From: Laetmonice hystrix
Taxonomy: Eukaryota
Length of the DNA stretch: 64,000 nucleotides
NCBI GenBank assembly: GCA_965235115.1
Contig: OZ249451.1
Span: forward strand, 16,616,001-16,680,000
Direction: 5' to 3'
Shown here: one piece after another, positions 29,419 through 62,539 of the stretch
Numbering within the stretch: the first letter of the stretch is position 1
Layout: the number at the start of each line of letters is the position of its first letter
Made by a program: the position numbers and the translations under genes
Notes under the pieces: generated by a model
The model's database searches: none
What the model saw: only the letters and a program-made list of their open reading frames with translations
What the model was told of the DNA's origin: nothing

Positions 29419-29469
29419 GTGGCGAGTAGCGGGGCGAGTGACGGGGCGAGTGGCGAGTAGCGGGCCGAG

Positions 29470-29975: not shown

Positions 29976-30463
29976 CTGAGTGAGTAGTGGTGGCTTTATG
30001 CCGTGTTGGCATCCAGGGCCATCTTCACGGCGAACCAGAGTAAAAAGACCATAAAATGAAATGAAATGAAAGGGACTTATTTTATCCCGGGCCCCAACGG
30101 GAATAACATGGAGGATGGGAAGCATTGTGCCGTGAAAGAAGCTTTACATGGAAACAGTGGGCACGGGATGACGCGGACAGTGACAGTGCAGCCAATCATG
30201 GTATCTATTCAAAGACCTGGCATACCGTTGTAAAGTATTGGAATACTTTGGACTAGTTATACCCATTATTACTTATGATCCAATTAATTTATTAAACTTT
30301 ATTTACTTAGTTACTCATTTTAATCAACTCATATACTCATGGATATTTACCGTGTGGAGTTGTAATATACTATTTAGGATTGTGTGTGTATAGAAATCTG
30401 TGTGCTGCTTGCCATCTCTGCAAAGGAATGTCCAAGTAAATAAGTCAAGTGGATCTGGGTATC

Positions 30464-31328
30464 TGTGACGCCAACCCCAGCCTCCTGGAGGACGCTGGTG
30501 ACAGACCTGATTAATGGCACCCCTAACTCCTGTGGGTAACCCAGATCCAACCGACTCCAGGCACGCGCACCCCACAGACTGGGAGGGCTACACTCCCACT
30601 GCGCATGCCTAGTGTAAACAATTGAAGATAAGAGGAACCAGCCCCTCCTCCTGCTCATGCGCAGGACTGTGAAACTTTGAGGATGAGTCACGACTCAGGC
30701 ATGCTCCCATAATAGGACTGGGTGGTATATTTCACTCTTCCACTGCACATGCCTAGTATAAACATTTAAGGGTTGGGGTCTGCCCCCTCCCTCTGCACAT
30801 GCGCGGAACTTTATAACTTTAACGGTGGGATTTTTCCACACTCCTACTGCGCATGCTTAGTATAAACATTTAAGGGTTGGGGTCTGCCCCCTACCTCTGC
30901 ACATGCGCAGAACTTTATAACTTTAATGGTGGGATTTTTCCACACTCCTACTGCGCATGCTTAGTATAAACATTTAAGGGTTGGGGTCTGCCCCCTCCCT
31001 CTGCACATGCGCAGAACTTTATAACTTTAATGGTGGGATTTTTCCACACTCCTACTGCGCATGCTTAATGTAAACATTTCGAAGAAAGGAGTCAACCCCC
31101 TCCCTTTGCACATGCTCAGTAGGGGTCTCCTGATGCACCTCTCCACTATATAAACTCATACTTGTGTTAATAAAGTGACTTCTTATTTTTGGCTTTTCAA
31201 TCCTTGAGTTTGAATCTTTGATTCTCTCAGTGATCATGTTGATCATTTAAGCCAGTTTCTTATTTTATACTCTCAGTGAAATCCACAAACAGTAACCGGG
31301 CTACCAACCTTCATCTGGTTGAGTAACA
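30464..31328 (+). mobile_element. LTR-like segment with ~116-bp tandem enhancer-like repeats (second copy from about 42554)
   Basis: TGTGAC...GTAACA ends; 3-4 ctgcgcatgc/catgcgcag-rich repeats; TATATAAA near 31146 then AATAAA; no TSD seen. Confidence 0.45.
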
Positions 31329-32607
31329 CTCAGCATCAGAGATGTGTGGATTTTACACCGTGTCGGTGTGTTGGAGTACACCATTAGTAACTTTTAACAA
31401 ATACGGGTTTATACATCAGTTTTAGCTAGTCACACAATTCTCTATGTTAGAGTATCCAAACCAACAGCAAGCCTTAGCCAGAAGTGCAGCAGGTCCAACT
31501 ACAAAGTCATAAATCATTCGCCTACAGGAGGAAGGTTCAGCAGGTACAGCAGAAAAGCAATAACTCATCCACCTTACCAGCCCAAACCCCTCCATAGGTT
31601 CAGGTAGTGCAGGTTTAGTCACAAACCAAGAAAATCCCTGAAAAGCTGGTAGATATATATAGACGCGCAACCTTGCAGTAGTCGTATGTGGTTTTAACTT
31701 GGATACGAGCGGACGTGGAGTTCTCTCGCTCAGCACTTAGCTTTCTCATCAGCCCGCACTTGGGAGGTTTTCGGCATTCACCCTTTGCAATAGGAGATCA
31801 GTACGGGAACAAGACTTTGCAGATTCTTCGGAATTACTGAGAAACGCTTCGGATTCAGACTTTCAGACATTACACATCACAGCTACTAGGGAAGTTCAGA
31901 AAGGGAGGTGAGAGTCAAAACTTGTAGCGTATGTGAATATCCACTTGTACTTTACTTCAACTTCAGAGGAGACACTTGTACTTTACTTTAACTTTAGAGG
32001 AGACACTTGTACTTTACATCTACCACGAGGAGATATCTGTACTCTACACACGGACGGACTCTACATCCGGATTGTCTTAATAAATGTTTGAACCTTCGAC
32101 CGCTAGTCATCCCTCAGTCTGAGTTGGACCCCATCTCACGAAGCCATACGATAGAGCCTAGCTTACCCCTATGCTTAGAAGATATTGTCGGGCAAAACCC
32201 TCTCGCAATAGCCAAAGCTCTACCCCAACATCGAATACCCATTTAAACGACAAAACCCCAAACAACGGCCCGAAACATCGGCATGTAAGGCCATCTTCAC
32301 GGCAAAAACAGAGTCAGACTACTGAAAACTGAAAGGAACCTATTTTATCCCGGGTCCCAGAAGGAACACCACTCCCATATGTATATATGGACTGATGCCA
32401 TGTTCTGTCAGTTGCAAAACTCGAGCACAATGAGCCACAACGGATTTTTCGGTTCCAATGTGTTAATCCTGCCAACCAACGGAGCCCGGCCAGGTTGGCT
32501 ATACATAACAATCTGGCGGATGAGTGAGTGAGTGAGTGAGTGAGTGAGTAGTGGTGATTTTCCGCCGTGTCGGCATCCGGGGCCATATTCACGGCGAAAA
32601 CAGGGTT

Positions 32608-33025
32608 AAAGGCAGAGCAGCTGACTGGATGAAAGCCCTTGATTTCACCCACAGGGAGTCATATCAAATCCTAAAAGGGAAAATGATTGACATTTTCAGC
32701 GACAAACGACCCGTCTGGCAGAAACACCGAGGTATCTTTGGATTGATGCAGCAAAAAGGACAGCTTTGGAATTTGCTGGAGTTTTAAGACAAAAACAGTG
32801 TGGATATGATGTGTCGGACCAAATTTTGATGTCAGTTTTTATAGGGGGTCTGGATTCATTGAGTAATTTATTGGCGGTACAGAATCCCACTAATTTCGGA
32901 GAGGCGGTAGAGATGGCATCTCGGCTGGAAACGGTGGATAATAAACATAGGGCTTGTTCAGCGGTTGAGAAAACTCCACAGGCGCTGGTGGAAATAATAG
33001 GAGCACTGACAAAGGCGGGAGTTGG
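32608..33025 (+). pseudogene. Gypsy gag fragment fused to a truncated module (copy at about 44597-45015)
   Basis: KGRAADWMKALDFTHRESY...; junction cagggtt|aaaggcagagc has ttaaa microhomology. Confidence 0.85.
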
Positions 33026-35399
33026 GCGAGTGGCGAGTAGCGGGGCGAGTGGCGGGGCGAGTGGCGAGTAGCGGGGCGAGTGGCGGGGCGAGTGGCGAGT
33101 AGCGGGGCGAGTGGCGTGTGATGTCACCTTCATAGTTATCTCCCTGTTGACCGACGGCTGCTGGCCCCAGCGCTGACGCTGGCTGCCGGACGGGAGCCCG
33201 TTGCTCCGGAGGGTGTGGCGGCAGTGTCCCTCCTCGGCCGCCCCCCCTCCTTCGGTGGGAGGACTACCGCTTGTCTCGGCGGTGAACCGCCTCGTCCAGC
33301 CTGGCCTCGCCCCGGGTGCGGTCGGTCGGGCGCGCGTGCGGAGTATGGAGGTGGCGGTGCCGTGCGGCGTAATTGTGCGTTGGAACTGGGTCCTGTGTCT
33401 CGGCAATATCCCCGGCAGTGAATAAACGTCCTTGTATTAATACTTTGTTGCCGTGTAATGCCACTGGCTCAAACTCCGGATCTGATCTCAAAATTTTGTC
33501 TTTTCTTCCAGAAACTGAAGGACCGAGGGCCCGTGGCCATGCATACACAGGGACGGTAACCTTCATGAATGAAGATTAAAAAATTAAATTTCAAACTCTA
33601 ACTGAGTGAGTAGTGGTGGTTTTATGCCGTGTTGGCATCCAGGGCCATCTTCACGGCGAAAAATAAGGTAAAATAAAAGGAACCGATTTTATCCCGGGCC
33701 CCAACGTAACTGCCCCAATACCATGAGTAGCATCAGATAAAACTCATTTTGGTCAGCCCGACGTACGTTGATTGCGCACGCAACAACGTTACGTTTACGT
33801 TAGCGTTCCGCGGATGCGTGCTGTCTGCTAAAATTCTCTAGTGACGCGATGACGTAAACGTTAGGCCGGGGTTAGGCCCGGGATCCATCCCAGAGAGAAA
33901 CCCCTTATTTGGGTATGGTACAGAAGATTTTTTGTTGGATTCCCTTAGAAGGGCAAGATATTTAGGTACGGGAGATTCGGCATATATAAACCCCTAGAGA
34001 CTGGTAGAGGGGGTTGCCTACTCCATCCAGAGGTACAGATCGAGAGACACCCACCCATCTGTGAGAGATATAAACCGTCGGCGTACAGTTTCCTTATTTT
34101 CCACGGAAACGACACACTGTTGTAAACCAGACATGAGCCACACTGGCTTCATCGGAACTAATGTAATAATTTTGCCAACCACCGGCGCACAGCCAGGATG
34201 GTTGTAGATTACTATATGGCAGATGCCCGTGGCGCCCTCCACCGACGTGCAGACTTGCACGATCGAGGCAGCCTTATCTCCCCAAGTCGCTACCGGCAGC
34301 GGCGGCGCCCCTCATCAGGCGTCTGCCACCTCGACCGATTATGGGAGTGAGTGAGTAAGGGTGGTTTTCCTCCGTGTCGGCATCTGGGACCATCTTCACG
34401 GCGAAAACAGGGTTACAAGACCATAAAATAAAAGGAACCTATTTTTTCCCAGGCTCCAAGGGGAATATCATTTTCACTCCAGAATAGAACACCTAGAACG
34501 ACGTGCGCCTAGAGGCCGGACTCCTAATGATCAGGAAAATATTCAAAGATCTTATCCGGATAGCTTGGGCCAAGTTTATCGTCCTACCGGACAACAATGG
34601 GAGAGAACCACGGATTCCTCGAGCAACCCTTCATGCATCATTTGGGGTAGAAAATGATGCCACCAAGAGATACCAAACTCGTTTCAAACAGTTGCACGAC
34701 AAACAGAGGTGACAACTTTGATAGGCGGATGAGAAAGGCAAAGACAATTTTTTTTATGAGGGACCAACGCATGGGAGCTACACGGGTGGTTAATCGGGAG
34801 AAAGTTCAACAGAATCGATGGACACAGACACTCCCCATCCCAACCAGCCAGACCTGTTACACGATCAATGCAGAGAGACGCTAAGCGACAATGTACTCAT
34901 AACACTCACTATCACTGCTAGCACAGAAGGACGAAACGTGACCGAGTACTGGCTCATAGTGTCGCATGGACATGGATGTTAACTCATGACGTTATGACAT
35001 TATGAGTGTGACGTTAAACCGGCAAACCACCACAGACACCCCTACTTCACAAATGAACTGCAAGAGGACTGGCCATCCTTGAACGTCTGATTGAATCACA
35101 TCAACTTCCTTTACAACACATCCCATCATTATGCAGTTGTGGTAATTGTTGTGGTAATTAGCCTTGTGTATTGCGTGAACAAAATATTGTTTCATCAGAA
35201 AGCCAAAACATCCAGCTAAAGAGGACCTGATACCAGAGGAAAATACTCTAGAAATTACTGTGGCTAAAGATGCAGTGCCGTGGCCGAAACCAAATGCTTA
35301 AAACGATGTTTAATCAAAGGAAAATATGTTTCGCGCAAAGAAAGGTGTATGCAATGTAAGGTCATTAACCATTTATCAGACGCATTTAAAATGTTAACA

Positions 35400-35850
35400 G
35401 AAAGTACTGTGTTGGGGCTTTGCTCGTGAAATGGGTATCCGACAAAGCTTGAACAACATTGTGTATGCGTCTGTTTGTAATGTTAAACAGGATCGTTAAC
35501 CCTAACTTCATATCGTGACACAAGTCCCTTCAAATAGTCCTAAATTGATCTGCATTGGCCAAAATATCTTAATTCCGACCTGTCCTAAACAAATGATACG
35601 CGATGGAATTCAGGAACTCAAATGGAGCCTTAATAATCCGTTGTTTTGACCATCTTTCATCAGGCAACAATTGAAAAGCAGCATTGTAGTTCTCTTTCAC
35701 AGCTGTTAGCGTAGACTGCAGGCCCTGCTGAACATCTGCCAAGCAAGTGGAGATAGGGCGACAGAGCTCCCCAAGTCGCCCTGACAGCTGGATGGGGCAT
35801 GGAGAAAGGGGTTGAGAAGGTATTAGAAGGTTGACGTGTCCCAAACTGTG
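35400..35850 (-). pseudogene. env-like fragment of an LTR retroelement (copy at about 47400-47820)
   Basis: QRIIKAPFEFLNSIAYHLFRTG resembles the cleavage-site/fusion-peptide region of invertebrate env proteins; contains stops. Confidence 0.4.
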
Positions 35851-36766
35851 TGTTACAGACGCACCGCAGAGGACCCATTATATCCTGCGGAATCCGTGGG
35901 AGAGATACCTCACCATATACACAGGGTCACTGAGATATAGAGCCCCAAATCCGTCCACTGTGAACAAGCAGAGAAATAAGATCCAAACGTTGGTCTTAGC
36001 CATTATCCCAACTACCATTAAGATGGCAACAGCTTCTCGATACGTAGTTCTTAAAGAAAGTGTTATTATTCCAGTGAACGAAGTACCGTACGGCCAGGTG
36101 TGCCAAGTAATCTTGATGAGACCGTATCCAGGTGAGCCTGGACTTCTGTCAGAAGTAATCCAGCTGGGATCTGTGAGTTCAGTCCAAGTAGCCGGGGAGA
36201 AAATTCTGCCTATTGCCAACCGTCCCTCAGTAACATCCAGCCATCCAGCACCCTCCTACCTCCCGGCAAGGGGAGCGCGGCCGACCGGGAAGGATACCCC
36301 ACCCAAGCTATCTCCACAGCCCGGGCCGAGTGGGTGGCGACCAAGGCCAGCCTCCTCCAGTCCGTGTGAAGGTCCAGGCCGACGTCAGCCCGCTGAGAAG
36401 CTGGCTACCCGAAGGCACTCCTCAGGCCCCACCAGCGTTACTCAAAGTTTGGCCGTAACAGTGACCTCCTCAACAGGCTCTACTACCAGCACAGTGCATT
36501 CCAACTGCAACGAAACATCTAAAGCACTGTACAAAGTACTGGATAAACACCTAGGGCTTCCAACTCAAAACAGTTTAGCAGCACAACAACCCCCCGTATC
36601 CGAAGCTGAGACCACTGGACAATCCTTGGACACAGCCCTGTACGATCCACACTATTCACCTGTGTCTGGATCTCCTCACGAAAGTCTCCTAGTGGCTAGG
36701 CTGGACTTATATGAACAACTGCTGGGGCAAACTCACGATTGCCCCAGCAACTCCCTGCAGGAGTAA
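35831..36766 (+). CDS. Unknown ORF (first ATG 36023), globular N-terminus and S/P/T-rich tail; frameshifted copy at 47806
   Basis: 311-aa open frame, no family recognised. Confidence 0.35.
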   Translation: MTCPKLCVTDAPQRTHYILRNPWERYLTIYTGSLRYRAPNPSTVNKQRNKIQTLVLAIIPTTIKMATASRYVVLKESVIIPVNEVPYGQVCQVILMRPYPGEPGLLSEVIQLGSVSSVQVAGEKILPIANRPSVTSSHPAPSYLPARGARPTGKDTPPKLSPQPGPSGWRPRPASSSPCEGPGRRQPAEKLATRRHSSGPTSVTQSLAVTVTSSTGSTTSTVHSNCNETSKALYKVLDKHLGLPTQNSLAAQQPPVSEAETTGQSLDTALYDPHYSPVSGSPHESLLVARLDLYEQLLGQTHDCPSNSLQE

Positions 36767-37142
36767 AACGGTAACTGTTACCATTTGTCGAAGACATATC
36801 CTTCACGACGTCGACCCAACCAGCGACAACAGCTACCAGTGGGGTCGCCAACGCAACAGTATAGACCGACTATGCCGCCCTTTGACCCATATGCGACAAG
36901 GTTAGTGAGTGAGTAATGGTGGCTTTACGCCGTGTCGGCATCTAGGGCCATCTTTACAGTGAAAACAGAGTAAAAAGACCATAAAATGAAATAAAACGGA
37001 AGGGACCTATTTTATCCCGGGCCCCAACGGGAATATTATTGAAACATGGAGGACGGCAAGCATTGTGCCGTGAAAGAAGCTTGACATGGGAACGGAGGGC
37101 ACGGGATGATGCGGACGGTGACAGTGCCGCCAATCATGGTAT

Positions 37143-37983
37143 TGTGTTGGCTCACACTTACATGTAGTACCAATTAAATCAGAAACAGGGATAGACATAT
37201 AGGGGTATAATTCCTCACAAGGGAAGTAAGTTCATATACATCATAGGATTTAGTTCCTGGAGTACAGACGTACCAAATTGACTGACATATTTACTGGAGT
37301 GCACACGGACCAAGTTGACTCACATACATAATTCTGGGTACAAACGGACGAAGATGACCGACTCTGTCTAGACGTCTGGTGACCGACATCATTAAATATC
37401 CGACAGGAGCACGGGATTTCCAGGAATGGGCATAGAGGTAAGCCAATGAGAAAGAGGCAGGTAGGAGGTAAGGTAAGCCAATGAGAAAGAGGCACGTAAG
37501 AAGAGGGGATTTTACCCTGGAGAGAGAGAGGTATAAGTAGTCAGGAAAACGGGGAGATAGTGCGGGCTTACCAGAGAGAGAAATGCGTGAAGGGAGTTAG
37601 CAGAAGAGTTCCCGCTAGGGAGCTTGTGCGTGAGTTAAAATGCTATTCCTGGAGTATGGAGACGTTTTGGAGTATTGTACATGTTCAGAAGTTATTGTGG
37701 AAATAGACAACTTGGATTATGTTCGTCAATATAAGGATTTAACTACTCGGTGTGGAGGATGTGGAGTATAATAAAGGACCGAACCGGATTCCTGGAGTGT
37801 TGTCCATCTCACCCAACCCAGCGAAGTTATACCAGAGCTAGCTCACCCCTATTACGACTCTGGAACTTTATTGGGGTAGACCTCTCGCACTACTAACGGA
37901 GTAACAAACGGACTTCACACACAGCCCGATATACGGATATACGAAGCTTAAGTATACGAAATTAAAACAAACACCCCAACGCA
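37143..37983 (+). mobile_element. Solo Gypsy LTR (841 bp)
   Basis: TGTGTTGG...CCAACGCA, 4-bp TSD GTAT on both sides; shares aaaacggggagatag with LTR 17228. Confidence 0.88.
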
Positions 37984-40900
37984 GTATCATCTATTTCACC
38001 TCGAATTTTACTCTGCAAAAACTTGCCTGATAGCAACATTCACGACAATCACAGCTGAACCACTGCATCATCGCCAGCAATATGACCATTACTCATTACG
38101 AACTGGACATATTCCCTTTTGTGAAAATGATCAGGACATTCTCACGGCTCTATCATTGTGAAGATGGTCGATCTACCTTACTTAAACCTTATTTACCTGA
38201 TTTCACCTGGTCTCCAACTCCAGTAAGGTATCAGACAAAAAACAGTCCGACTACTTACTTCCTAAACCTGCCAATGATAGGACTGATACAGAAGATATAT
38301 TTGAACTGGGAGAGGGTGAGACAGACGGTAACGGGGATCCAGAGCGAACGCTACACAAAGCAGATCTGGACTTGCGTTGTCATTTGGGGGTCCACCCAAC
38401 TACAGTGAGTGAGTGAGTAGTGGTGGTTTTACGCCGTGTCGGCATCCAGGGCCATCTTCACAGCGAAAACAGTGTCAAAAGACCATAAAATTAAAGGAAC
38501 CTATTTTATCCCGGGCCCCAACGGGAATATGATTAAAACACACTCCATCCTGTCAGCCCAACAGGGCTCTCGAGCCAAAATTTATCTGTGTGCCTTTCAC
38601 AGAGAACAAGCCTGGGGCAAGTGGATGTGAGATGGTGATTACTCTCTTACGCTTCTTTTCCTATTTAGCTGAAAATAATTTTTATCATTAGGATATTACT
38701 GTTTTTAATAGTTTCATCATGTAACCCCAGAATTACATCATGTCAAAACGATTTTCTCTCCTTCTAGGAAAGAATGGCGTTAGCGAAGATGATAGGCAAC
38801 AGTTGAAGATGTTTCTGAGGGCTGTTGCAAATGCCATATCAAAGGATGAGCATGACAGATCTGTTGATGTCTATGTTCTAGTAGGAACATATATAGTTGT
38901 ATTAGGGTTGGATTAGTGTATTTGTTGTAAAACTTACAGTAGTACTGTCTAAATTCTACCTAGTAGGGGCTCCAAGCAGTCCCTCTATATCATCCATTCT
39001 TATTTACCACAAGTCATAACTCGGGGTAGAAGGAATCATTTGTTTGGCCCTGTCATCTTATCCTAGTTTTAATTGCCCATGTTTGAATATTTAATCGTCT
39101 CAAGTTTGGTTTAGAGCATTTGAGGTAAAACGTGTAGAAGTAGAACTGTTTTTGACAACTTTGTGTTGTACTAAGCTTTAACAGTTAAGGGTTTTGTACC
39201 TGGTGTGCTGTAAGTCGGGTGCTATACTTAATCATAGCTGTTAGGGGTTGCAAGCAATCCCTTATTGTCTTCTTATTTATCTTCCTATTTGCCTTCTTAT
39301 TTATCTTTGTACTAGTCGTAAGTCAAGAGTAGTTGGAAGCTGGGTCAGCGACTCAGCATGTTCTATGTAGTAGCCATCTGGAATTCCATACTACGGTGTT
39401 ATTTTATGTAAACAAACGTACTCTCATATCCCGAGAGGGGTCTTCAGAGTAATAAATCATTGTCATTGACTGCATTGTGACTGCACTGTGCTCAAGTCTC
39501 CCATAGAATTAAGCGCAGTTGGCACTGGTTCTACAAGAGATCCGCCTGTTTCCAGCGGCAAGAAAAGCATTCTGGCATCTGGATCCGGGGAAACCTGACG
39601 ACGGATAGATCCCTGCCGGGCCTGCTAACCCAGTGCTGTCTCTGCGCTGGATTGGCCCTGCTGCCCCAAGGTGTGTGTTAGCATATCCACACCAACAGCA
39701 GGTTTAGCCCGAAGTCCAGACCGTCCGTGCGTGGGCGTGGCCATATGGAGGGCTGAGACGTCAGTCTTCAACCACTCCTGGAGATCTGATCTCCTGTTGG
39801 CCACCCTTTGAAGTGCCGGGGTTGGGGACAATTCCCATTGGTCACCATTCCCATTGGCTGCAGCCCTCCCTTAAGACGGGCTGCACGGCTTGGAATCGGG
39901 GAGAGTGATCCACCCTCTCCAATGGGACGGCAGCCAACCCCCCCCCCCCGCCCGAGCAGCAGTCGAGCAGCAGGCGTGGGAGCAGCATTCAGCGCAGTTG
40001 GCAGCACTGGTTCTTCTAGAGATTCGTCCAGCGGCAAAGAAGAGCATTCTGGCATATCTGGCCCGGCTACGGCTGGCGACTGATAGATCCCTGCCGGGCC
40101 TTCTTACCCAGTGCTGTCTACTGAGCCAGATTTACCCTGCTGCTCTGCGGTGTGTGTTTGGTGTGACTGGCTTGCCTCTCAAAGGAGTGGCGCTCTCCAC
40201 AACCCATGCACCCCTCCCCATCCGTCTTTTGAAAAACATCTTTTCGGTGCTTCAGAATTTGGCGTTTACATCACAATATATATCCTTGTGCATATTGTAA
40301 GACACCTTGGAAAAAACAATCCCCACAGCTCACAGATATCAGCTCACTGAGAAAACATCCAGAAACAGATCATTGGCAAAATAATAATACCGGCATGTTA
40401 AATTATACCATCATCTAATGCCAATATCTCTTTAGAGAAGAATTCTGGAAACAGATTAAGACCACTGTAGAGGTGAGTGAGTCAGTGAGTAATGGTGGGT
40501 TTACGCTGTGATGGCATCTATGGCCATCTTCACCGCGGAGTAAGACTACTGAATAGTAAAAGGGACATATTTCATCCCGGGTCTCTACGGGAACTACTGA
40601 GAGGAGTATAAAAGACCTCGGTGACTAAAGGTCCAGATACACAGACCGATTTACGGCCGATTTTGATCTGCGGCCGGTTTTTCTCCATAGGTTTCCATAG
40701 GGTTGTTGTCGTGGGGGAAAGGCCCTTGTGTCCCTTTATTGGAGGTTCCAGACATGCATGGGTATGTGTTATACACACAAGCCGCTGGAGGGAGAAGTGA
40801 CTCCAGCTGGTATAGAAATTAGGATTTGGGGCTCTAACCGACACGCCGGGGTTCGATTCCCCGTCTAGATAAGTGCTGCTAGAGAAACGCTGGCGGCTAG

Positions 40901-52900: not shown

Positions 52901-53365
52901 CAAGCTTTTCAAAGTATTCTACAATTTAGTTCTTCTTCTGTTAATGACTACATCTGGGGAAAGGAAGTGGGGAGAAGATTAACTTAGTTCCTCTGCCTGC
53001 GGGTATATAGCAGACCGTATGGTTCAGATCGGCTGTCATGAAAAGTCACACTATCCAAGGACTGCCTGCCCTCTATGTCCACAGTCTTAATCTTCTCACG
53101 GTTTTATGGCCATCTCACCAACTCATTGCATTCCTGTGTCTATAGAGAATCCCTTGTTCCCGTAAATTTTGTGAAAGATTTATTTTCCCAATCTAGGTCC
53201 CAGATGATGCACCAAGCATTTTCTTAGTCCATTCTTTCACAGAGCAGAAGCAACTAACTCGCACTTCCATTCTTTCGTCTCTGAATATCCAGTTCAAAGC
53301 TACAGTCTATTTTTATTATTTCCATTGACGAAGTGGAAACTGATATAATTGGTAACATCGAAACA

Positions 53366-54771
53366 ATGGCGTCATCCCTGAGGAGAGGAAAGCCACTGAG
53401 AAGACAGGCCCGACAACTTATCTGCGATGTGGCCAAATACTTTGAGGGCCAGGCTGCCGGTAAATTCCCAAAGGAAAAGTGGTTAGACAAGGCTGCAACC
53501 TGCTTGGAAGTGAGTGCAACAACCATAATGAGGGTGAGAAAAGAGAAGAGGGAAAAACAGTTTTTTCCTCATCTGTCTTGGATGACTTTGATCTTGGTGT
53601 CATAAGAAGAAGAGTCCATTCCTTCTATGAGCGTGGAAAGATACCAACTTTAGACAAACTGACACAAGACATACGTGAAAATACCAATTTCACGGGAGGA
53701 CGAACATCATTGCACCAAATTCTTAAGGAAATATGCTTCAGATTTAAGAAGTCTGATGGCAGAAAATACCTCTTGGAAAGATCTGATATTGTCGCCCTCC
53801 GTCGCTCCTACGTACGCGCTATGAGAGAAAACAGGAATTCAAATAATCCCCGCCCAGTCATCTATCAGGATGAAACGTGGCTGAATGCTCATCATACAGT
53901 GTCCAAGTGCTGGCAGCTTGACGTTGAGGGAAGGTCACAGGATTCAATAGGCCTCAAAGTACCCACAGGACAGGGAAGAAGACTCATTATTAATCATGCT
54001 GGATCAGCTGCTGGATTTGTTCCCAATGCTTTGCTTCTTTTCAAGGCGAAGAGCAGCACGGGTGACTATCATGATTCGATGAACGGGGACAATTTCAAGA
54101 AATGGCTGAATGAAAAACTTATCCCAAACATACCACCTAATTCCATACTGGTCATGGACAATGCACCATATCACAGCATGTTAAGTGAGAAGGCACCAAC
54201 TTCATCAAGCAGAAAGGAAGACATCAGGAAATGGCTCAGTGATAAGAATATTCCCTTTACTGATGACATGATCAAAGCGGAACTGTATGAACTCGTTAAA
54301 CTGAACAAGCCAAGAGAGCAGCGTTACATTGTTGACGAAATTATGGCAAAAAATGGACATAAAGTTGTTAGACTACCACCGTATCATTGTAAACTCAATC
54401 CTATTGAACTCATCTGGGCCAATATAAAGAAATATGTAGCATCTAAAAATACCTCATGGAAAATGGCTGATGTTGAAAAACTTTGCCAGGAAGCAGTGAA
54501 CAGAATCAGTGCTGATGACTGGAAAAATGCTGAGAACCATGTGATAAAGATTGAGGAAGAGTACTGGAAAAATGACGGCATGATCGATGTAAGGATTGAA
54601 CAGTTGATAATTGATACTGCTGAAAGTTCCTCTTCCGAGGAGACAGATTTGTCAGTGGACAGTGATGACGACACTGATATGGAAGATTCAGAAGACTTAG
54701 AACTTTATTTTGGATGTGGTCCATTAATAATGAGTCAGGAGAGGTTGTTGGGGCATCCACATAGCTCATAA
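53366..54771 (+). mobile_element. IS630-Tc1-mariner transposase, DD82E (Sailor-type), one frameshift near 53550
   Basis: IYQDETW, VMDNAPYHS, LPPYHCKLNPIE; 82 residues counted between the second D and E; N-terminus (ATG 53366) in a different frame; TIRs not identified. Confidence 0.88.
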
Positions 54772-56048
54772 GGAGTTTCTCTGGTGAGTGACTTTATGAT
54801 TAATCAACAGTCAAACAGACAGTGGAGGAGTGGGGTGGTGTTGACGTGTCTGCACCACGTGCAGCTGTTTACATCCTCCCGCGGGCCGTTACGGCCCGTG
54901 GCCTGTGATTGGTCTCGCTGAAGGAGTGGGGCGGGAGGGTCATGAATATATGCTCGTGCTTTTCTTACAGCGAACAGACTGTAGACGCCCAACCTTACAG
55001 TTGGGTTGTATGTGGTTTAGCTTGGGATATGAGAAGGTATAGAGCTCTCCCGTTCGGCGGGATGTAGCTTTCCTTATCGTCAGGAAGCCCACACCTGGGC
55101 GCGTTTCGGAACTTATACTTCACATAGGACATGAAACCGTGACTTCATTTGGTAACCCTGTTAGAGGTACCAAGTTTGATAAAAGTTCGCCCCTGGTTAG
55201 GTCTCGAATCCCGTCAAGGAATTTAACCTATTCTGTAAGCATAGAGACAGCAGACATCGTCATTGCCTGAACTCTGCCTGATCGTGTGTAAAATCCGAGC
55301 TCTGCGCCAAAGAGCCGGGATCATTTATGGAGGAGAAACGAGGGGTTTGCGTAGGTATGATATTAGTATAGGTACTCGCACATAATATGTATCTAGGACC
55401 CATGTCGTGTGCTCAGTATGTATTGTCGAGGAAATGTAAACAATAGCTGTACTCCCGTTAACCACCATCTTGGTTCTCGCATCTCGCGCCGTATTAAAAT
55501 CTGTAGGCAGTGTGCCATGATCCAGATATTGGAATAACCGATTACATTCCTTGTCTTCTCGTTGTTGCTCGATAAGGGTTTCATGCTATGTTGGCATCTA
55601 AGGCCATCTCCATGGCGAAAACAGAGTAAGAATAGTGAATAGTGAAAGGGACCTATTTTATGCCGGGTCCCAACGGTAACTGCTGAAAAGAGCATAAATA
55701 ACATCGTTTACTAGGCTAGTGCTAGTGTAACGGAGATGTATTTCAGCTATGTATGGGTACCGTGTGTCTGAGCCCGAGCCTTGCACTTGGGCTGATTCAG
55801 CAACTGCATGTACATGGTCAGCATGTGATCACAATTAGCCTGGGTTGGTCCCCATCATTGCAAGATGGAACCGAGAGTCAGTCTAGTAAGCAGCGAGGCG
55901 AGTTATTTGGTGGACTGCTGGGGCATCGAACCCAGCGAGACCTGTACAATGATCTTTAGTGTACCCCAGCCATAGGACAGAACTCTAACGGCGCCCTCAG
56001 AGATAGAGAGGCCCCACCTACTGGGCGCCGTCCCAGTAATCAACGGTA

Positions 56049-56630: not shown

Positions 56631-59387
56631 TATTATTGGCTTCTCCCGGGCAAGAGGTGGCCCTGGCGGCCCTGCAGCCCACTGTGTCCCAGGCGGGCCC
56701 GGAGCAGCCGATACAGTCCCAGAACTATAAAAGAGTCAGAAGTCCAGCCTCTGACAAAAACTCATCGTGGTTTGGATCGATTGCCTATTTGTTCCTTAGT
56801 ATTTCATAACGAAATAGGTGGACTGGATAAAAACATTCCAAGGGAATGGTGGCTCCACCCTCGGCAAGCTCCGCCTCTTCCCACAAAAAACGCTTCCAAA
56901 TAAGGTATAATTCCAATTCGTTGCATTTATTTAATGAGGGTGGGGATTTCGCGATGAATTATGTGCATTAGAAAAGTCTGATTCGCTCTTAGAAATGTTA
57001 AAGGGAGGGACGTTTCTTACTATGTTGGCGAACATTTTGGGTATCCAGTTAAGTTTCCAGATAAAGCACTCCGAATTTTCAGAGGGCATCCCCAAGAAAT
57101 GTAAACGAGGGAAAAACATCGCGTTTAGTTTCGCAGCCAATAAACTCTAGTTTTACATTGTAAATCATGAGGAGTACCTTAGTCAGACGAGGAAAAGGCA
57201 GTTAAGCGAGTCATCAAGTGAGTCAAGTATCGATTTCTCTGATATAGAGCCAGTTTCATCAAAACAAATGAAATTAGAAGCGAAGACCGAAGAGCCAAAG
57301 GCGACACTCCCGGGCGAGAGGTGGCCCTGGCGGCCCTGCAGCCCACCGTATCGCTGGCGTGCCCCGAGAGGTCGGACTCGCCGCTACCAACAATCAGGAC
57401 GGCTCGGCGAGCGAAACCCTACACCCGTTCGGATGGAAGCCAACCCACGGGCCGATACAGTCCCGTGAGCCCGGGGTTACCAGCTAACCCCGTGGAGACA
57501 GAGGCAGCGTCCCTGGCAAGCCTCTTGCCCTTGGATTGCAGCAGCTGGCCCTCAGATTGGGACAGGCTCTCCCCAATCGTGGGGATCAGCCTAGACAGTA
57601 AATTTTCAGAGTGTATTCTTATTCAACTGTCTCTATGAGAGAATAATTGGAATCCCAACTGACATCCCCAAATTTATAAACAGTGAAATATTGGAGCTTG
57701 GTGAGTGAGTGAGTGAGTAATGGTGGTTTTATGCCGTGTCAGCATCCGGGGCCATCTTCACGGCGAAAACAGTGTAAAAAGACCATAAAATGAAAGGGAC
57801 CTATTTTGTCCCGAGCCCCAATGGGAATATCATTGAAATAGGGCTACCGACAAGCCAGAACTATAAAAGAGTCAGAAGTCCAGCCTCTGACAAAAACTCA
57901 TCGTGGTTTGGATCGATTGCCTATTTGTTCCTCAGTATTTCATAACGAAATAGGTGGACTGGATAAAAACATTCCAAGGGAATGGTGGCTCACCCTCGGC
58001 AAGCTCCGCCTCTCCCCCAAAAAACGCTTCCAAATAGGTATGATAATTCCAATTCGTTGCATTTATTTAAAGAGGGTGGGGATTTCGCGATGAATTATGT
58101 GCATTAGAAAAGTCTGATTCGCTCTTAGAAATGTTAAAGGGAGGGACGTTTCTTACTATGTTAGCGAACATTTTGGGTATCCAGTTAAGTTTCCAGATAA
58201 AGCACTCCGAATTTTCAGAGGGCATCCTCAAGAAATGTAAACGAGGGGAAAACATCGCGTTTAGTTTCGTGAGTGAGTGAGTAATGGTGGTTTTACGCCG
58301 TGTCGGCATCTGGGGCCATCTTCACGGCGAAAACAGAGTAAAAAGACCATAAAATGAAAGGGACCTATTTTATCCCGAGCCCCAACGGGAATATCATTGA
58401 AGCACACCCCAATAGGGCTACCGACAAGCCAGAACTATAAAAGAGTCAGAAGTTTGTTCCTTGTATATTTCGCGATATATTTTCAGAGTGCATTCTTATT
58501 CAACTATCTCTATGAGAAATAATTCGAATTCCAACCGACAACTCCAAATTTATAATCAGTGAAATAGTTGAGCTTGGAGACTTAGCCAAAGAATTGGATC
58601 TTATTTTCAAGCTCAACTCTCAATGGGAAATATCTGAGAAGCACAACACGTCATTTCATCCATAAGGCCAGACTCAGAAATGGGGTGTGTATATATTGCC
58701 ATGGACGCTGTGTAGTAAAAATCGGTGTGCTCCCCAGAGAGGTTTTTACACTCCCATGTTGTGGAATGTTAATGCATTTTCGGTGCTTCAGAATTTGCCG
58801 TTTACATCACAGTATATATCCATGTGCATATTGTAAGACACCTTGGGTAAATCAATCCCCACAAGCCACAGGTCTCAGTTCAGAAAACGTCCAAAAACAG
58901 ATAATCGGGAAAATAATAGCAAGTGAACATTTTTGGTGGATTCCAAATACATAATCGACTGAATTCGGAATTCCCTATAGTCTAGCTGGTGACGAGACAA
59001 TGCACATTTAAGGGGGATAACGGTCAAAAGCTATAACACGGGGGGAAAGCGTTATAAATACTATCTCTCTGACGGGCAATAAACCCCCTGTGACAAACCA
59101 ACTACAGTATATATAGTTATAGAGAAATCTACCCATTTCCAGCGTATAACTTTTCCCAAACTCTGTATTTATGTAGATTCGACCTTTCTTGTTGCAAAAA
59201 AGCCCTGTGATTGAAAGAGTTGTGACTCGTATAGTTGTAGAGAAATCTACCCATTTCCAGCGTATAACTTTTTCCTAAACTCTGTATTTGAACGTTTTCC
59301 TATATAACCTGGATATATCCTAAATTCTCGCCATCCAATACACTGATAATACTAATACATAAAATTTGAGTTCACATTAACAAACGT

Positions 59388-60224
59388 TTGAAACTAAAAG
59401 CACACGTTTTCCAAGAACATTCACGAAAAATGCGTGAATTCGTTATTAAGAACGCACATTTGTTAATCAAAAGATGTAACTTTTTACAGTGCCTGGAAAA
59501 TTTCCATAAATATGGGGTGGAAACGCTTTTCGAAACTTACACCATCGGCTTTCCAGAAACACGCCGTTTAAATCTACGCCAGTGCCAGCAAATATTCTAC
59601 CTCCTTTCTAAGGCTAATCCTGCCCGTGGTTTGGATCGACTGCCTATTTCTTCCTTAGTATTTTTCGCAATATATTTTCAGAGTACATTCTTATTCAGCT
59701 ATCTCCATGAAAGAATAACTGAAAACACAACTGACATTCCCAAATTTATCATCGGCATAATATTGGAGCTTGGAGATTCCACTAAGGAATTGGAGCGCAT
59801 TTTCAAGCTCTTACAACGTGAATTTGGTCTTTCTAAACGATCATGTTTAAGCTTACTTACATCGCCTGATTCGAAGCTAACACCAACTCGCCTGGGAAAA
59901 TATCTAAGAAGCAGTATGCGTCGTTTCATGCATATGGCCAAACTAAGAGATGGTGTGTGTATATATTGCCGCGGACAATGTGTAATAAAAATAGATGTGC
60001 TCCCAAGGGAAGTTTTTACACTCCCATGTTGTGGAATGTTGATGCATTTTCGGTGCTTCAGAATCTGGCGTTTGCATCACAATATATATCCATGTGGATA
60101 TTGTAAGACACCTTGGGTAAATCAATCCCCACAACCCACAGGTCTCAGTTCAGAAAACGTTCAAAAACAGATAATCGGGAAAATAATAGCAAGTGAACGG
60201 TTTTGGTGGATTCCAAATACATAA
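59388..60224 (+). CDS. Intronless RING-finger protein, possibly of viral origin
   Basis: CIYC...LPCCGMLMHFRC...CGYC; first ATG 59430; deleted or partial copies at 40240-40310, 41750-42166, 57600-57700, 58480-58954. Confidence 0.65.
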   Translation: MKLKAHVFQEHSRKMREFVIKNAHLLIKRCNFLQCLENFHKYGVETLFETYTIGFPETRRLNLRQCQQIFYLLSKANPARGLDRLPISSLVFFAIYFQSTFLFSYLHERITENTTDIPKFIIGIILELGDSTKELERIFKLLQREFGLSKRSCLSLLTSPDSKLTPTRLGKYLRSSMRRFMHMAKLRDGVCIYCRGQCVIKIDVLPREVFTLPCCGMLMHFRCFRIWRLHHNIYPCGYCKTPWVNQSPQPTGLSSENVQKQIIGKIIASERFWWIPNT

Positions 60225-60999
60225 TCTACTGAATTCTAACTATAATACGGGGGAAAAGCGTTATAAATACTATCTCTCTGACGGCATTGCTCACATCATG
60301 CGTCACTGGCAGGCCTATAAACGGCTCTAAACGTGTGAACATCTCTTGCGTTTGAGTCTTAGACAGTGCAAACGTTTCATTATCATCACTCGTCCCTGCT
60401 GATAACCAGCTGCAAACGAAGTATTCTGAGCAGAAGTATTTATACCGCTTGATTTCTTTAAGATTTTGTGATTTAAAATATTTCCTGCATAGTGAGAAAA
60501 TATTACTTGGTTTTAGGCTTTTAAATTTTAGTTAGATGTGAGTCGAACGACGTGGCCTCCTAGTTAGTGACTCACGGGAACTCCATGAATTCATTCATGG
60601 TGCTAAACACGTCGATTCATTCAGGGGCTACATTGTGAGATCGACTGGCGAGCTTTCGCTGGTGCATCTAGATTCAAGCGTCGTAGCTATAAAGATATTC
60701 AGCACACTTGAGAACACTTTGAGTAATAACGTTTGTCGAAACATTCACGATTTCTTTCAAAGTTGATGCAGGAGGAAAACATTTTTCCTGGTCAATATGT
60801 ATTGCAATGTATTCCAACTCGCATTCAAAATGACTCTATGGTTTTATACATGACTGTTCCCCCAAGCAATGACACAGCCTGAGGAGAGCGGTTCAAGGCA
60901 GCAGCTGCTAGTTCTCTCCCAATCAGGGACTTTTCCGTCTCTACCCTGTCAATTAGGCTATTTTTCTGATAATCCTGCCTGAAATCATATTACCACAAT

Positions 61000-61720
61000 C
61001 TCAGAACTGCCGCTTCCAAGCTCGATCTAAGTCGTGTATGGTTTCTCCATGACACAATACCCGTCAATTTCTGGGTGTTTGCAACGCAGTAGCCCCGATT
61101 ACATCGTTTAGTCTGACAAATTATGGTGCATGGGTAATCTGAGGTAGGTAATTCGAAGGGTAACCTCCACAAATTCATTAGCAGTACCAACTAATGTGTA
61201 CAGAGATAAGTAATAACTAATGGGTAAAAGTTCAGAGAAAACAAGTGGATATCCAGCAATGAGCAGCCAGTAATCACACAATGAAACACTATTATTCCAA
61301 TACAAATTCGCGAGCCAGAGGGAAGCATTTTAAACCACGTGGAATAAGCATGGATAGAACAATGAGCTTAATCATCTTATTTTCATTCTTCATATCATGT
61401 CAAGCCTGCACATCTTTTTTACCTGGAACGTTACTCTGTAAGAACTTGCCTGCTATAGCAACATTCACGACGATGACAACCGAACATCTGATCATCCCTA
61501 CTAACATAAGTGAGTGAGTGAGTAGTGGTGGTTTTCCGCCTTGCCAGCATCCGGGGCCATCTTCACGGCGAAAACCTACTTACATAAGCAATACTCATTA
61601 CGAACTGGAGGTATTCCCTTTTCTGAAGACTATCCGGACATCCTCATGCCTTTATGATTGTGAAGATGGTCTATGCACCTTCAAACGTCATTTGCCTGAC
61701 TTCACCTGGTCTCTAAGGTA
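61000..61720 (-). pseudogene. Possible decayed class A GPCR fragment (paralogous pieces at 37040-37142 plus 37984-38400 and duplicate)
   Basis: VVIVVNVAIAGKFLQS...KNENKMIKLIVLSMLI (TM5-TM6-like); SLWIPVTV...IFCISPIIGRFRK (TM3-like) at 38250-38380; many stops. Confidence 0.35.
61510..61575 (-). mobile_element. 5'-truncated module copy with target-site duplication
   Basis: ctactaacataag (61498-61510) vs ctacttacataag (61576-61588); flanks rejoin into sequence collinear with 38000-38230. Confidence 0.8.
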
Positions 61721-62059
61721 GAGTTTCTCCTTTTCATATTAGTTTCTGATAAAATGTCTATTATATGATTGTTGGCCAAAACCATGTTCTGTGAAAGTTT
61801 GCATTTCACAGTTCACCATCTGATTCTACTGCCTCTGTTTCCAACACAAGGTAGATATGTTTTCATATTCCCTAAAGTCAGGTCTTTCAACATTACACCG
61901 ATTTTCTGATTGCTAAGTGAATTTCACTCGTTTTATCTCATTTACATTTTACAAATAAGAGCACATGTTTCATTGCCGTTTTAGTCCACCCCCCGACACT
62001 CCGAGTACATCCGACACCGAAATCTTGGAAAATGCTGACTCTTCTACGACCAAGAAGAG

Positions 62060-62122
62060 ATCTCGAGATAATGAGAAAAGATCTCGAGATAACGAGAAAA
62101 TATCTCGAGATAACGAGAAAAA
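62060..62122 (+). repeat. 21-bp tandem repeat x3
   Basis: gatctcgagataa.gagaaaa units. Confidence 0.85.
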
Positions 62123-62539
62123 ATTGTTTTTCAGTGTCCTAAATCAGCCACCGTAGTACCGCCATCTTCACAGCAAAAACAGAGTAAGAATACTGAATAG
62201 TAAAAGGGACCTATTTTATCCCGGGTCCCAACGGGAGCTGCTGAGAAAAGTATAATTGACCTCGGTGACTTAGCTCTTGCTAGTGGTCTGACACATTGTT
62301 TGCATCTAAAGCCGTCAATGAAAAGAAGATCAAACCACCGCAAATGAAATAATACACCCGATCAGCCCAATAGGGCTGCCGATAAGCTTAAACTTTAGTG
62401 TACCACGCAGAAGCCCATCTTCTGATAAAAATTCTAAAATCACTTTTGCTCTGACATTACTACAAAGATATTAAAGACTTGTCTTATTATAAAACCGTTA
62501 TCTAACCACAACTTCCCACAATATCGAGTAAGAAGACGA

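What the first reader, a model, noticed from the sequence alone, without database searches (positions are those of the whole stretch)
29977..62235. Repeat-cassette array: 20 co-oriented structured modules punctuate a mosaic of transposon, virus-like and host-gene pieces
Seen: a ~125-bp module occurs 20 times in 32 kb, always in the same orientation, and was not seen in the first 29.9 kb. The 0.2-5 kb intervals are unrelated pieces: gag, LTRs, env-like, integrase-like, RING gene, GPCR-like. Most modules sit exactly where one source sequence ends and another begins (58269 cuts tagtttc|g, whose uninterrupted form is at 57130; 57701 cuts the RING gene at gagcttg|g). Six copies come from the 10-kb duplication. 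Inference: a locus that accumulates and rearranges mobile-DNA fragments using a retroposon end as the joint, possibly a piRNA-cluster-like archive. Formally repeat-spacer-like, but not CRISPR.
Basis: partly seen in the sequence, partly recalled or inferred. Interest (0 to 1): 0.85.

Follow-up and report, generated by a model that had tools for sequence, protein, structure and literature searches.

The report
Co-oriented retroposon tails in duplicated DNA
A 32-kb stretch holds 20 same-direction copies of the tail end of a small retroposon, scattered through transposon debris that has been duplicated several times. This is mostly ordinary repeat biology rather than a cassette-capturing system, although the perfect co-orientation is only partly explained.

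Summary
There are 20 copies, all on one strand, between 29977 and 62434, and none in the first 29.9 kb.

The module is the 3' end of a non-LTR retroposon whose sense strand is the window's minus strand. It ends in a variable (TCAC)n simple-repeat tail and is 5'-truncated to 62-275 bp. Two copies are plain insertions with target-site duplications: one of 13 nt with an empty paralogous site, and one of 16 nt nested in an older copy.

The module is not detectably structured: folding z-scores are about 0, there is no covariation, and Rfam gives no hit.

The 20 copies shrink to about 7-12 independent events:
- six come from a 10-kb duplicate at 98-99% identity;
- others come from older direct duplications at about 90-95% and 68-86% identity.

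Every internal homology in the array is direct; none is inverted.

Some duplication and rearrangement breakpoints do lie inside or exactly at modules, including one hybrid module and one 7-nt microhomology joint. The modules therefore act as recombination substrates, as dispersed repeats do. The transposase "cassette" is an ordinary Tc1/mariner insertion with TIRs, a TA duplication and an empty paralogous site.

A piRNA-cluster role cannot be tested here. Verdict: a new member of a known kind, of modest interest.

The parts
29977..30204 (-). Module copy 1. It has a tail of 2 units and extends to the same distal end as copy 6. It is a hybrid: the left flank plus the first ~57 nt are ~99% identical to copy 4, and the rest is ~87% identical to copy 6.
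32278..32371 (-). Module copy 2, a tail-less partial copy (module positions ~35-128). It is probably the same old insertion as copy 16, given the collinear paralogy.
32521..32610 (-). Module copy 3. It has a tail of 7 units and only the first 75 nt of the module. It is joined to the gag-like block at a 7-nt microhomology (ttaaagg). Its left flank is 74% identical to the left flank of copy 5.
33603..33706 (-). Module copy 4. It shares its left flank with copies 1 and 12. Its distal part resembles copy 5, and it has an internal deletion.
34343..34487 (-). Module copy 5, with a tail of ~3 units and ~143 nt.
36901..37142 (-). Module copy 6, with a tail of 3 units. It is 242 nt long and ends at the same distal position as copy 1.
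38405..38573 (-). Module copy 7, with a tail of 3 units and ~145-170 nt.
40473..40640 (-). Module copy 8, which is composite. A 62-nt tail-proximal copy (tail of 4 units) is inserted into an older tail-less copy. It is flanked by a 16-nt direct repeat with 13 of 16 positions matching.
41546..41730 (-). Module copy 9, with a tail of 3 units and 185 nt. It shares its left flank with copy 18, as part of the block 41319-41844 = 58036-58566.
44267..50517 (-). Module copies 10-15, at 44267-44360, 44510-44599, 45561-45661, 46287-46431, 48871-49112 and 50375-50517. They are duplicates of copies 2-7.
55577..55727 (-). Module copy 16, a tail-less partial copy.
57701..57899 (-). Module copy 17, with a tail of 4 units and ~195 nt. 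It abuts the RING-like frame at ...gagcttg, and that frame does not resume after it.
58269..58453 (-). Module copy 18, with a tail of 3 units and 185 nt. It abuts the flank ending ...tagtttc, which runs on uninterrupted at 57124-57145.
61509..61575 (-). Module copy 19, with a tail of 3 units plus the first 66 nt. It is a simple insertion flanked by ctactaacataag / ctacttacataag (12 of 13 matching). The paralogous sequence at 37980-38240 is uninterrupted.
62161..62434 (-). Module copy 20, which is tail-less. It carries an extra ~110-nt internal segment and then resumes homology to copies 7, 9 and 17.
30229..40241 (+). First copy of the young 10-kb direct duplication.
   Evidence: breakpoints
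42306..52225 (+). Second copy of the young 10-kb direct duplication, 98-99% identical to the first. It may be a real duplicate or a haplotype duplicate of the assembly.
28947..30034 (+). A ~1.05-kb block made of a Gypsy-like gag fragment, a GC-rich minisatellite and the start of a module. It is repeated at 32606-33660 and 44595-45615 (94-95% identity). The right end of the repeat lies inside the module core.
52683..54983 (+). Tc1/mariner-type DNA transposon. It has 26-nt TIRs, a TA duplication and a 430-aa DDE_3 ORF. The empty paralogous site is at about 31660.
59388..60224 (+). Longest copy of a multi-copy Cys/His-rich (RING-like) ORF. Partial copies lie at 40241-40386, 41737-42166 and 58460-58954.
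56719..57133 (+). Non-coding segment 'A', also present at 57855-58268 (97%) and 41326-41546 (95%). Its first ~45 nt are the distal part of the retroposon. The rest is flank and ends in ...tagtttc.

Best explanation
What the module is. It is the 3'-terminal part of a non-LTR retroposon: either a SINE-sized element or the shared tail of a LINE/SINE family. Its RNA sense strand is the window's minus strand. On that strand each copy ends in a simple-repeat tail, (TCAC)n with 2-7 units, which directly abuts the flank. Each copy is cut off at a different distance upstream, as expected when target-primed reverse transcription stops early.

How the array arose. Copies were inserted into a transposon-rich stretch that has since been copied several times in direct orientation. 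Those copying events were a 10-kb duplicate at 98-99% identity, 0.5-1.1-kb blocks at 90-97%, and an older paralogy at 68-86%. This multiplied the modules without changing their strand.

Role of the modules. Because they are the densest local homology, some later repair and recombination events have breakpoints in them or exactly at their tails. This gives hybrid modules and modules flanked by unrelated DNA.

Shown versus inferred.
- Shown: the tail, the truncation series, two target-site duplications, one empty site, the duplication layers, one hybrid module, and one microhomology joint.
- Inferred: that the remaining same-strand bias comes from duplication history, plus orientation-dependent retention or insertion in a region whose recognisable ORFs all read on the plus strand.
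For: Tail.
- The variable-length simple repeat occurs only at module starts, and only on one strand.

Truncation series.
- The 3' end is constant and the extents vary: 62, 66, 75, ~104, ~143, 185, ~195 and 228-242 nt.

Insertion signatures.
- In the filled/empty comparison of 61400-61740 against 37980-38240, the flanks are ~79% identical on both sides. The insert is exactly the tail plus 66 nt, with a 13-nt duplication matching at 12 of 13 positions.
- A second short copy is nested in an older copy, with a 16-nt duplication matching at 13 of 16 positions.

Duplication history.
- Duplication layers are seen.
- All homologies inside 29.9-64 kb are direct.

Breakpoints in modules.
- Copy 1 is a hybrid.
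- Copy 3 is joined to its neighbour by a 7-nt microhomology.

Other evidence.
- An unrelated transposon in one interval has its own TIRs, TA duplication and empty site.
- Mollusc SINEs are reported to end in terminal tandem repeats, including (CACT)n in Bathymodiolus. That is the same repeat in another register. Those SINE families also swap heads, bodies and tails (PMC4758252).
- The closest relatives of the window's DIRS/Ngaro-type reverse transcriptase include host contamination in MAGs of marine-invertebrate symbionts.
Against: - Target-site duplications were found for only 2 copies. For 3 junction classes with an uninterrupted paralogue (41546/58269, 57701, 32521), the flank does not resume after the module.
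- No reverse-transcriptase-encoding partner and no tRNA- or 5S-like head were found in the window. The family therefore cannot be named.
- After allowing for every duplication I could detect, 7-12 events still share one strand. By a coin-toss model this has a probability of about 0.0005-0.016, which duplication history may not fully explain.
- No genome-wide copies could be obtained, so local density could not be compared with the background.
Confidence: 0.6

Rival explanations
1. Uni-strand small-RNA source locus (flamenco-type transposon trap). The region would be one long transcription unit, and selection would keep insertions of this retroposon in only one orientation relative to that transcript. 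This is compatible with the modules being ordinary retroposon tails.
For: - All 20 copies are on one strand, and the same-strand bias remains after discounting duplications.
- The region is dense transposon debris of several classes.
- Recognisable coding pieces in 30-64 kb are all on the opposite strand to the retroposon.
- Flamenco is described as a long single-stranded precursor locus (PMC10495008).
Against: - There are no RNA data.
- The two classes of mobile DNA lie in opposite senses, so any single transcript would be sense to one class.
- Much of the bias is inherited by duplication.
- The array is only ~32 kb in a 64-kb view.
Confidence: 0.15
2. Retroposon cDNA as an active joint. New cDNA primed at a nick or break would be resolved by annealing to a nearby older copy in the same orientation, or by microhomology to another DNA end. 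This gives tails that abut unrelated flanks, no target-site duplication, hybrid modules, and local deletions or direct duplications. It would itself enforce co-orientation.
For: - Three tail junctions abut flanks that never resume.
- Copy 1 is a hybrid.
- There is a 7-nt microhomology at the distal end of copy 3.
- All rearrangements in the array are direct.
- Endonuclease-independent L1 insertions without target-site duplications are documented in human. They are associated with deletions and translocations and show microhomology (PMC1920257).
Against: - The same structures arise from ordinary recombination between pre-existing co-oriented repeats.
- The flanking duplicates at the 57701/58269 junctions are only ~87% identical, while neighbouring blocks are 97% identical. 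That does not fit one recent event.
- In human such events are rare, so a majority here would be unusual.
Confidence: 0.15
3. Plus-strand promoter or LTR-like module. The module would be the upstream part of a multi-copy plus-strand gene or element, namely the RING-like ORF family, and would have spread with it.
For: - A TATA-like motif (ctataaaag) lies ~165 nt into three copies and points rightwards, with RING-like ORFs downstream.
- All long ORFs of the array are on the plus strand.
Against: - Two copies consist only of the tail-proximal 62-66 nt bounded by target-site duplications, which a plus-strand promoter or LTR cannot give.
- No LTR pairs were found.
- There is a variable simple repeat at the boundary.
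- Most copies have no RING-like ORF downstream.
Confidence: 0.04
4. Assembly artefact. Part of the array would be a false duplication of two haplotypes, or a mis-join in repeat-rich DNA.
For: The 10-kb duplicate is 98-99% identical, with small indels. That is within the range of heterozygosity expected in many marine invertebrates (own knowledge).
Against: - The older layers (68-97% identity), the target-site duplications and the 14 non-duplicate copies do not depend on it.
- The two 10-kb copies have different neighbours at both ends.
Confidence: 0.25

Closest known systems
SINEs and 5'-truncated LINE copies with terminal tandem-repeat tails (for example the mollusc SINE families of PMC4758252, and LINE/SINE pairs that share a 3' tail)
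   Same: - A simple-repeat 3' tail of variable length.
- A constant 3' region with variable 5' truncation.
- Target-site duplications of 13-16 nt.
- Different distal 'bodies' attached to one tail.
- The same tetranucleotide repeat as reported for Bathymodiolus SINEs.
   Different: - No Pol III-type head and no partner LINE could be found in the window.
- No sequence comparison with the published families was possible.
- Most copies here lack detectable target-site duplications.
Non-classical (endonuclease-independent) L1 insertions and L1-associated deletions (PMC1920257)
   Same: - Retroposon pieces sit between non-contiguous flanks.
- They have no target-site duplication.
- There is microhomology at a joint.
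   Different: - Those are rare, isolated events.
- They are often truncated at the 3' end as well. Here the tail is intact in 11 of 14 non-duplicate copies, and the events are clustered.
Recombination between dispersed same-orientation repeats (Alu/L1-mediated deletions and duplications; own knowledge)
   Same: - Hybrid repeat copies.
- Breakpoints inside the repeat.
- Only direct rearrangements.
   Different: The simple unequal-crossover products do not fit the order of flanks around copies 1, 3 and 4. A templated repair event fits better.
Uni-strand piRNA cluster such as flamenco (PMC10495008)
   Same: - Dense transposon fragments.
- A strong strand bias for one family.
   Different: - No small-RNA evidence.
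- Other transposon pieces lie in the opposite sense.
- The array is much smaller.
CRISPR arrays and integron cassette arrays (formal resemblance only)
   Same: A repeated unit alternates with unrelated sequence, and all units are co-oriented.
   Different: - The repeats are 62-275 nt and only 70-92% alike.
- Spacing is 0.26-5.2 kb.
- The context is eukaryotic transposons.
- There is no associated nuclease or integrase.
- The intervals are not single captured units.

Membership tests
Non-LTR retroposon inserted by target-primed reverse transcription | The 3' end carries a poly(A) or simple-repeat tail of variable length that directly abuts the flank. | tested here: met
   A tail of 2-7 tetranucleotide units is present at 11 of 14 non-duplicate copies. 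The repeat occurs nowhere else in the window, apart from one degenerate 12-mer at 63727.
Non-LTR retroposon inserted by target-primed reverse transcription | The 3' end is constant and the 5' truncation varies. | tested here: met
   Extents run from 62 to 242 nt in tail-bearing copies.
Non-LTR retroposon inserted by target-primed reverse transcription | Target-site duplication, with an empty site for comparison. | tested here: met
   Copy 19 has a 13-nt duplication (12 of 13 matching) and an uninterrupted paralogue. Copy 8 has a 16-nt duplication (13 of 16 matching).
Non-LTR retroposon inserted by target-primed reverse transcription | Most copies are flanked by target-site duplications. | tested here: not met
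   None was found for the other tail-bearing copies, using exact and 2-mismatch scans out to 1.2-3 kb. Three have flanks that never resume.
Non-LTR retroposon inserted by target-primed reverse transcription | An autonomous partner that encodes reverse transcriptase and has the same 3' end. | not testable with these tools
   There is no non-LTR reverse transcriptase in the window, and the source genome could not be reached.
SINE in the strict sense | A 5' head derived from tRNA, 5S or 7SL RNA with an internal Pol III promoter. | tested here: not met
   ARAGORN finds nothing and Rfam finds nothing. The two copies that share a distal end (1 and 6) show no such head.
MESC-type mollusc SINEs (PMC4758252) | The conserved ~95-nt MESC central domain. 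| not testable with these tools
   The paper's sequences are in figures and in supplements that are not held. Only the tail repeat unit can be compared, and it is the same as reported for Bathymodiolus.
Uni-strand piRNA cluster | Abundant piRNA-sized reads from one strand, derived from a long precursor. | not testable with these tools
   No RNA data.
Uni-strand piRNA cluster | Transposon fragments lie predominantly in one orientation. | tested here: inconclusive
   The retroposon tails are all in minus sense. The gag-like pieces, the Tc1-type element and the RING-like ORFs are all in plus sense.
CRISPR array | Short near-identical repeats, unique spacers of uniform size, and neighbouring cas genes. 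| tested here: not met
Integron-like cassette array | An adjacent site-specific recombinase, and structured recombination sites that bound single-gene cassettes. | tested here: not met
   The only tyrosine recombinase belongs to the DIRS/Ngaro-type element at 253-4796. The module shows no significant fold. The intervals are mosaics, not single ORFs.
Helitron capture array | Fixed terminal signatures, a 3' subterminal hairpin next to the end, and no target-site duplication. | tested here: not met
   The boundary is a variable simple repeat, and target-site duplications are present at two copies.
LTR (solo or paired) | Paired long terminal repeats around an internal region, with short fixed-length target-site duplications. 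| tested here: not met
   No such pairs exist in the array, and fragments of 62-66 nt with 13-16-nt duplications are incompatible with an LTR.

The most novel reading that the evidence does not exclude
The locus could be an orientation-locked retroposon-tail array that grows because new cDNA is resolved on neighbouring same-strand copies. This would stitch unrelated DNA ends together and duplicate flanks. The array would also be transcribed as a single-strand small-RNA precursor. In that case it would be a self-extending transposon archive in a marine invertebrate.
Probability: 0.08. Interest if true: 0.6.

Novelty: new member of a known kind. Interest (0 to 1): 0.28.

Why it matters
If the main reading is right, the finding is a worked example of a familiar process. 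One abundant retroposon tail, together with repeated direct duplications, can imitate a repeat-spacer array. It is useful mainly as a caution for scans that flag co-oriented repeats.

The part that could matter is the residual strand bias and the tail junctions between unrelated flanks. If these proved typical of small-RNA source loci or of cDNA-mediated repair in this genome, the locus would offer a clear view of how transposon graveyards grow in a non-model invertebrate.

Tried and rejected
- Rfam, at gathering thresholds on the whole window and at E<=10 on 57600-58700, gave nothing relevant and no ribozyme.
- Single-sequence folding on both strands gave z-scores from -1.7 to +0.7. Alignment folding on both strands gave 0-1 compensatory pairs.
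- Exact-match search for target-site duplications was negative. It was superseded by the mismatch-tolerant scan and the paralogue alignment.
- The metagenome DNA scan gave 5 loci that match only 26-29 nt of the core, which are chance matches. Two scans of viral contigs gave nothing.
- Exact-protein look-ups for the integrase and transposase ORFs gave nothing. A look-up of the best reverse-transcriptase relative returned no DNA.
- Protein homology searches for the RING-like ORF and for the 311-aa ORF gave no hits. Pfam on 50 ORF pieces recognised only the known transposon domains.
- A full-text search for the module core gave nothing.
- Hypotheses considered and dropped:
  - LTR or U3-type promoter;
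  - Helitron;
  - introner or spliced-leader unit, because the left flanks vary and the exon does not resume;
  - telomere-attached head-to-tail retroelement array, because the strand and the plus-sense ORFs do not fit;
  - simple unequal crossing-over for the block around copies 1, 3 and 4, because the order of flanks does not fit.


Full report
OBSERVATION

A blastn search with one copy as query (41530-41720) returns 20 matches, all on the plus strand. The first is at 29977 and the last at 62161-62236, and there are none in 1-29976. A 25-nt core pattern with up to 3 mismatches hits 14 times, all plus, against 0.00 expected from shuffles. Spacing is 258-5182 bp. The window has no N.

The copies are not uniform. 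Homology spans 62 to about 275 nt, and pairwise identity is about 70-92% outside recent duplicates. The best-conserved stretch is a ~21-nt core, for example 58314-58334.

WHAT THE MODULE IS

On the plus strand, every complete copy begins with a tetranucleotide repeat (gtga) of 2-7 units that abuts a different flank each time. This repeat occurs nowhere else in the window, apart from one degenerate 12-mer at 63727. The opposite end is ragged: homology stops after 62, 66, 75, ~104, ~143, 185, ~195 or 228-242 nt.

The decisive evidence is a filled/empty pair. The sequence 37980-38240 is a ~79% paralogue of 61400-61740 on both sides of copy 19. The only large difference is an insert made of exactly the repeat tail plus the first 66 nt of the module. 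That insert is bracketed by ctactaacataag and ctacttacataag.

A second short copy (62 nt, at 40473) sits inside an older tail-less copy, between 16-nt direct repeats that match at 13 of 16 positions.

A fragment that keeps only the repeat-bearing end and is framed by a 13-16-nt duplication is what target-primed reverse transcription produces when the repeat is the 3' tail. So the element's sense strand is the window's minus strand, its tail reads (tcac)n, and the copies are 5'-truncated.

Different copies carry different distal sequences beyond about 130 nt:
- copies 1 and 6 share one, and end at the same base;
- copies 7, 9, 17, 18 and 20 share another.

This is the pattern seen when several short retroposons share one tail. 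A study of mollusc SINEs reports terminal tandem repeats, including (CACT)n in Bathymodiolus, which is the same repeat in another register. It also reports free exchange of heads, bodies and tails between families (PMC4758252).

I could not test sequence homology to those families. No tRNA-like head, Rfam family or partner reverse transcriptase was found. The family therefore remains unnamed, and 'SINE' in the strict sense is not shown.

NOT STRUCTURED

Folding of three copies on either strand gives z-scores between -1.7 and +0.7 against dinucleotide shuffles. Alignment folding of nine copies gives no compensatory pair on the minus strand and one on the plus strand, with a non-negative covariation term. 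A 7-nt inverted repeat around the core and a 5-nt one further on are all there is.

HOW MANY INDEPENDENT EVENTS

- Six copies belong to the second copy of a direct duplicate, 30229-40241 / 42306-52225, at 98-99% identity.
- Copies 1, 4 and 12 share one left flank, inside a ~1.05-kb block present three times at 94-95% identity.
- Copies 9 and 18 share a flank, inside 41319-41844 = 58036-58566.
- The left flanks of copies 3 and 5 are 74% identical.
- An older collinear paralogy with an offset of 23.3-23.7 kb links 31504-31798 and 32280-32359 with 52524-55132 and 55593-55672. It also links 37988-38217 and 38451-38526 with 61411-61716 and 62161-62236. Copies 2/16, and perhaps 7/20, are therefore old duplicates.
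- Every homology inside 29.9-64 kb is direct. The only inverted one involves the palindrome arm at 27.8-28.7 kb.

This leaves roughly 7-12 independent events on one strand, with a coin-toss probability of about 0.016 to 0.0005. The strand bias is therefore real but far weaker than '20 of 20' suggests. Further undetected old duplications would weaken it more.

ARE THE MODULES JOINTS

Five junction classes can be compared with an uninterrupted paralogue.

Two are plain insertions (copies 19 and 8, above).

In three, the flank does not resume after the module:
- the segment ending ...tagtttc runs on at 57124-57145 but is followed by copies 9 and 18;
- the RING-like frame runs through ...gagcttg|gagact at 58567-58585 and 59762-59776 but is followed by copy 17 at 57701;
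- the flank shared by copies 3 and 5 reaches the tail 104 nt earlier in copy 3.

Copy 1 is a hybrid. Its flank and first ~57 nt are ~99% identical to copy 4, while the rest matches copy 6 at ~87%, including a private 10-nt insertion. So the 1.05-kb repeat ends inside the module core.

The other end of that repeat is joined to position 75 of copy 3 through a 7-nt microhomology. This looks like a templated repair event that used the module as homology on one side.

Many breakpoints are nevertheless not at modules. Both ends of the 10-kb duplicate are elsewhere, and so are several ends of the RING-like and 'A' blocks.

The modules thus behave as dispersed repeats do elsewhere: they are preferred substrates for recombination and repair. 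Retroposon pieces lying between non-contiguous flanks, without target-site duplication, are documented for human L1 (PMC1920257).

WHAT THE INTERVALS ARE

- The gag-like pieces are Gypsy-type gag fragments, 50-67% identical in protein to the gag of the window's own Gypsy-type element.
- The 'integrase-like' piece is a Tc1/mariner-type transposon at 52683-54983. It has 26-nt TIRs, a TA duplication and an uninterrupted 430-aa DDE_3 ORF. The ORF has thousands of relatives. The transposon's empty site is preserved in the paralogue at about 31660. It is an ordinary insertion into an interval, not a captured cassette.
- The Cys/His-rich ORF (full copy at 59388-60224, four partial copies) has no homologue among 5.8 billion proteins. 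It has only a non-significant match to a RING domain (E = 2.1).
- The 311-aa ORF at 35831-36766 and the 168-aa ORF at 63156-63662 match nothing. 'env-like' and 'GPCR-like' are therefore unsupported.

MECHANISM AND RIVALS

Most likely (about 0.6): ordinary retroposon insertions, followed by direct duplications and repeat-mediated rearrangements.

Two more interesting readings remain open, and both are compatible with that identity:
- selection for one orientation inside a single-strand small-RNA precursor locus;
- cDNA-mediated joining resolved on neighbouring same-strand copies.

Neither can be tested without RNA data or the rest of the genome. A plus-strand promoter or LTR reading is contradicted by the two short insertions. 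CRISPR, integron and Helitron membership tests fail.

LIMITS

The source genome could not be reached. The best protein relative of the DIRS/Ngaro-type reverse transcriptase is only 59% identical. It comes from ENA assemblies and from MAGs of marine-invertebrate symbionts that evidently carry host DNA. The organism is therefore only inferred to be a marine invertebrate, possibly a mollusc. Background density of the module is unknown. The 10-kb duplicate could be a haplotype duplicate of the assembly.

These were Pol III boxes, a ribozyme core, a primer-binding site, the start of 5S rRNA, and recombinase-site descriptions. I also went through the ORF-piece boundaries of the Gypsy-type element as listed by the ORF listing.

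None of the remembered letters was sent to a tool, saved or used as evidence. The boundaries are not repeated here. The consensus lines printed by DNA alignment were not used.

Noticed in passing
window 253-4796: A DIRS/Ngaro-type retroelement. It has a gag-like ORF with a CCCH zinc knuckle, a reverse-transcriptase ORF and a tyrosine-recombinase ORF, none visibly interrupted. It has split direct repeats, 253-441 = 4352-4540 and 4144-4351 = 4589-4796, both 100% identical, so it is probably young. The best database relative of its reverse transcriptase is only 59% identical.
   Followed up: partly
window 17228-26651: A Ty3/Gypsy-type LTR retrotransposon with 988-bp LTRs that are 99.6% identical. 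It has gag, protease, RT-RNase H and integrase domains. The pol region is split into four ORF pieces, meaning three interruptions, and the element contains an internal 51-bp tandem-repeat array. Gypsy-like protein fragments also lie at about 15.7-16.2 kb.
   Followed up: partly
window 27780-29469: A palindrome. Two inverted arms (92-96% identical) each carry a Gypsy-like gag fragment. They meet at a GC-rich 12/19/31-bp minisatellite that flanks a degenerate telomere-like hexamer tract of 10 units at 28662-28721. The left arm continues leftwards as an old minus-strand Gypsy-like element as far as the young element's LTR. The origin is unexplained. It could be a head-to-head fusion or a healed break.
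   Followed up: partly
window 59388-60224 (also 40241-40386, 41737-42166, 58460-58954): A multi-copy Cys/His-rich ORF of up to 278 aa. It has no detectable homologue in the protein collections and only a non-significant RING match. Its copies are 80-98% alike and are recombined with the non-coding 'A' segment.
   Followed up: partly
window 41712, 56725, 57861, 58435: A TATA-like motif (ctataaaag) lies inside the distal part of the retroposon and points away from its tail, so it is antisense to the element. In two cases a RING-like ORF lies downstream. It may be an antisense promoter, but this was not tested.
   Followed up: no
window 58269-58488: The module's tail reads gtgagt on the plus strand, and the interval ends in ...ttttcag just before the RING-like frame. 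Segment 'A', this interval and the RING-like frame could therefore form a two-exon plus-strand transcript, with the retroposon tail serving as splice donor. This is speculative.
   Followed up: no
window 30721-31119 and 42811-43106; 5432-5701; 9731-9877; 62053-62121: Tandem repeats of 104, 88, 41 and 21 bp whose origin is unknown.
   Followed up: no
window 4800-17200: This 12-kb stretch has no ORF over 118 aa and no Pfam match in the ten longest ORFs. It also contains no copy of the module.
   Followed up: partly
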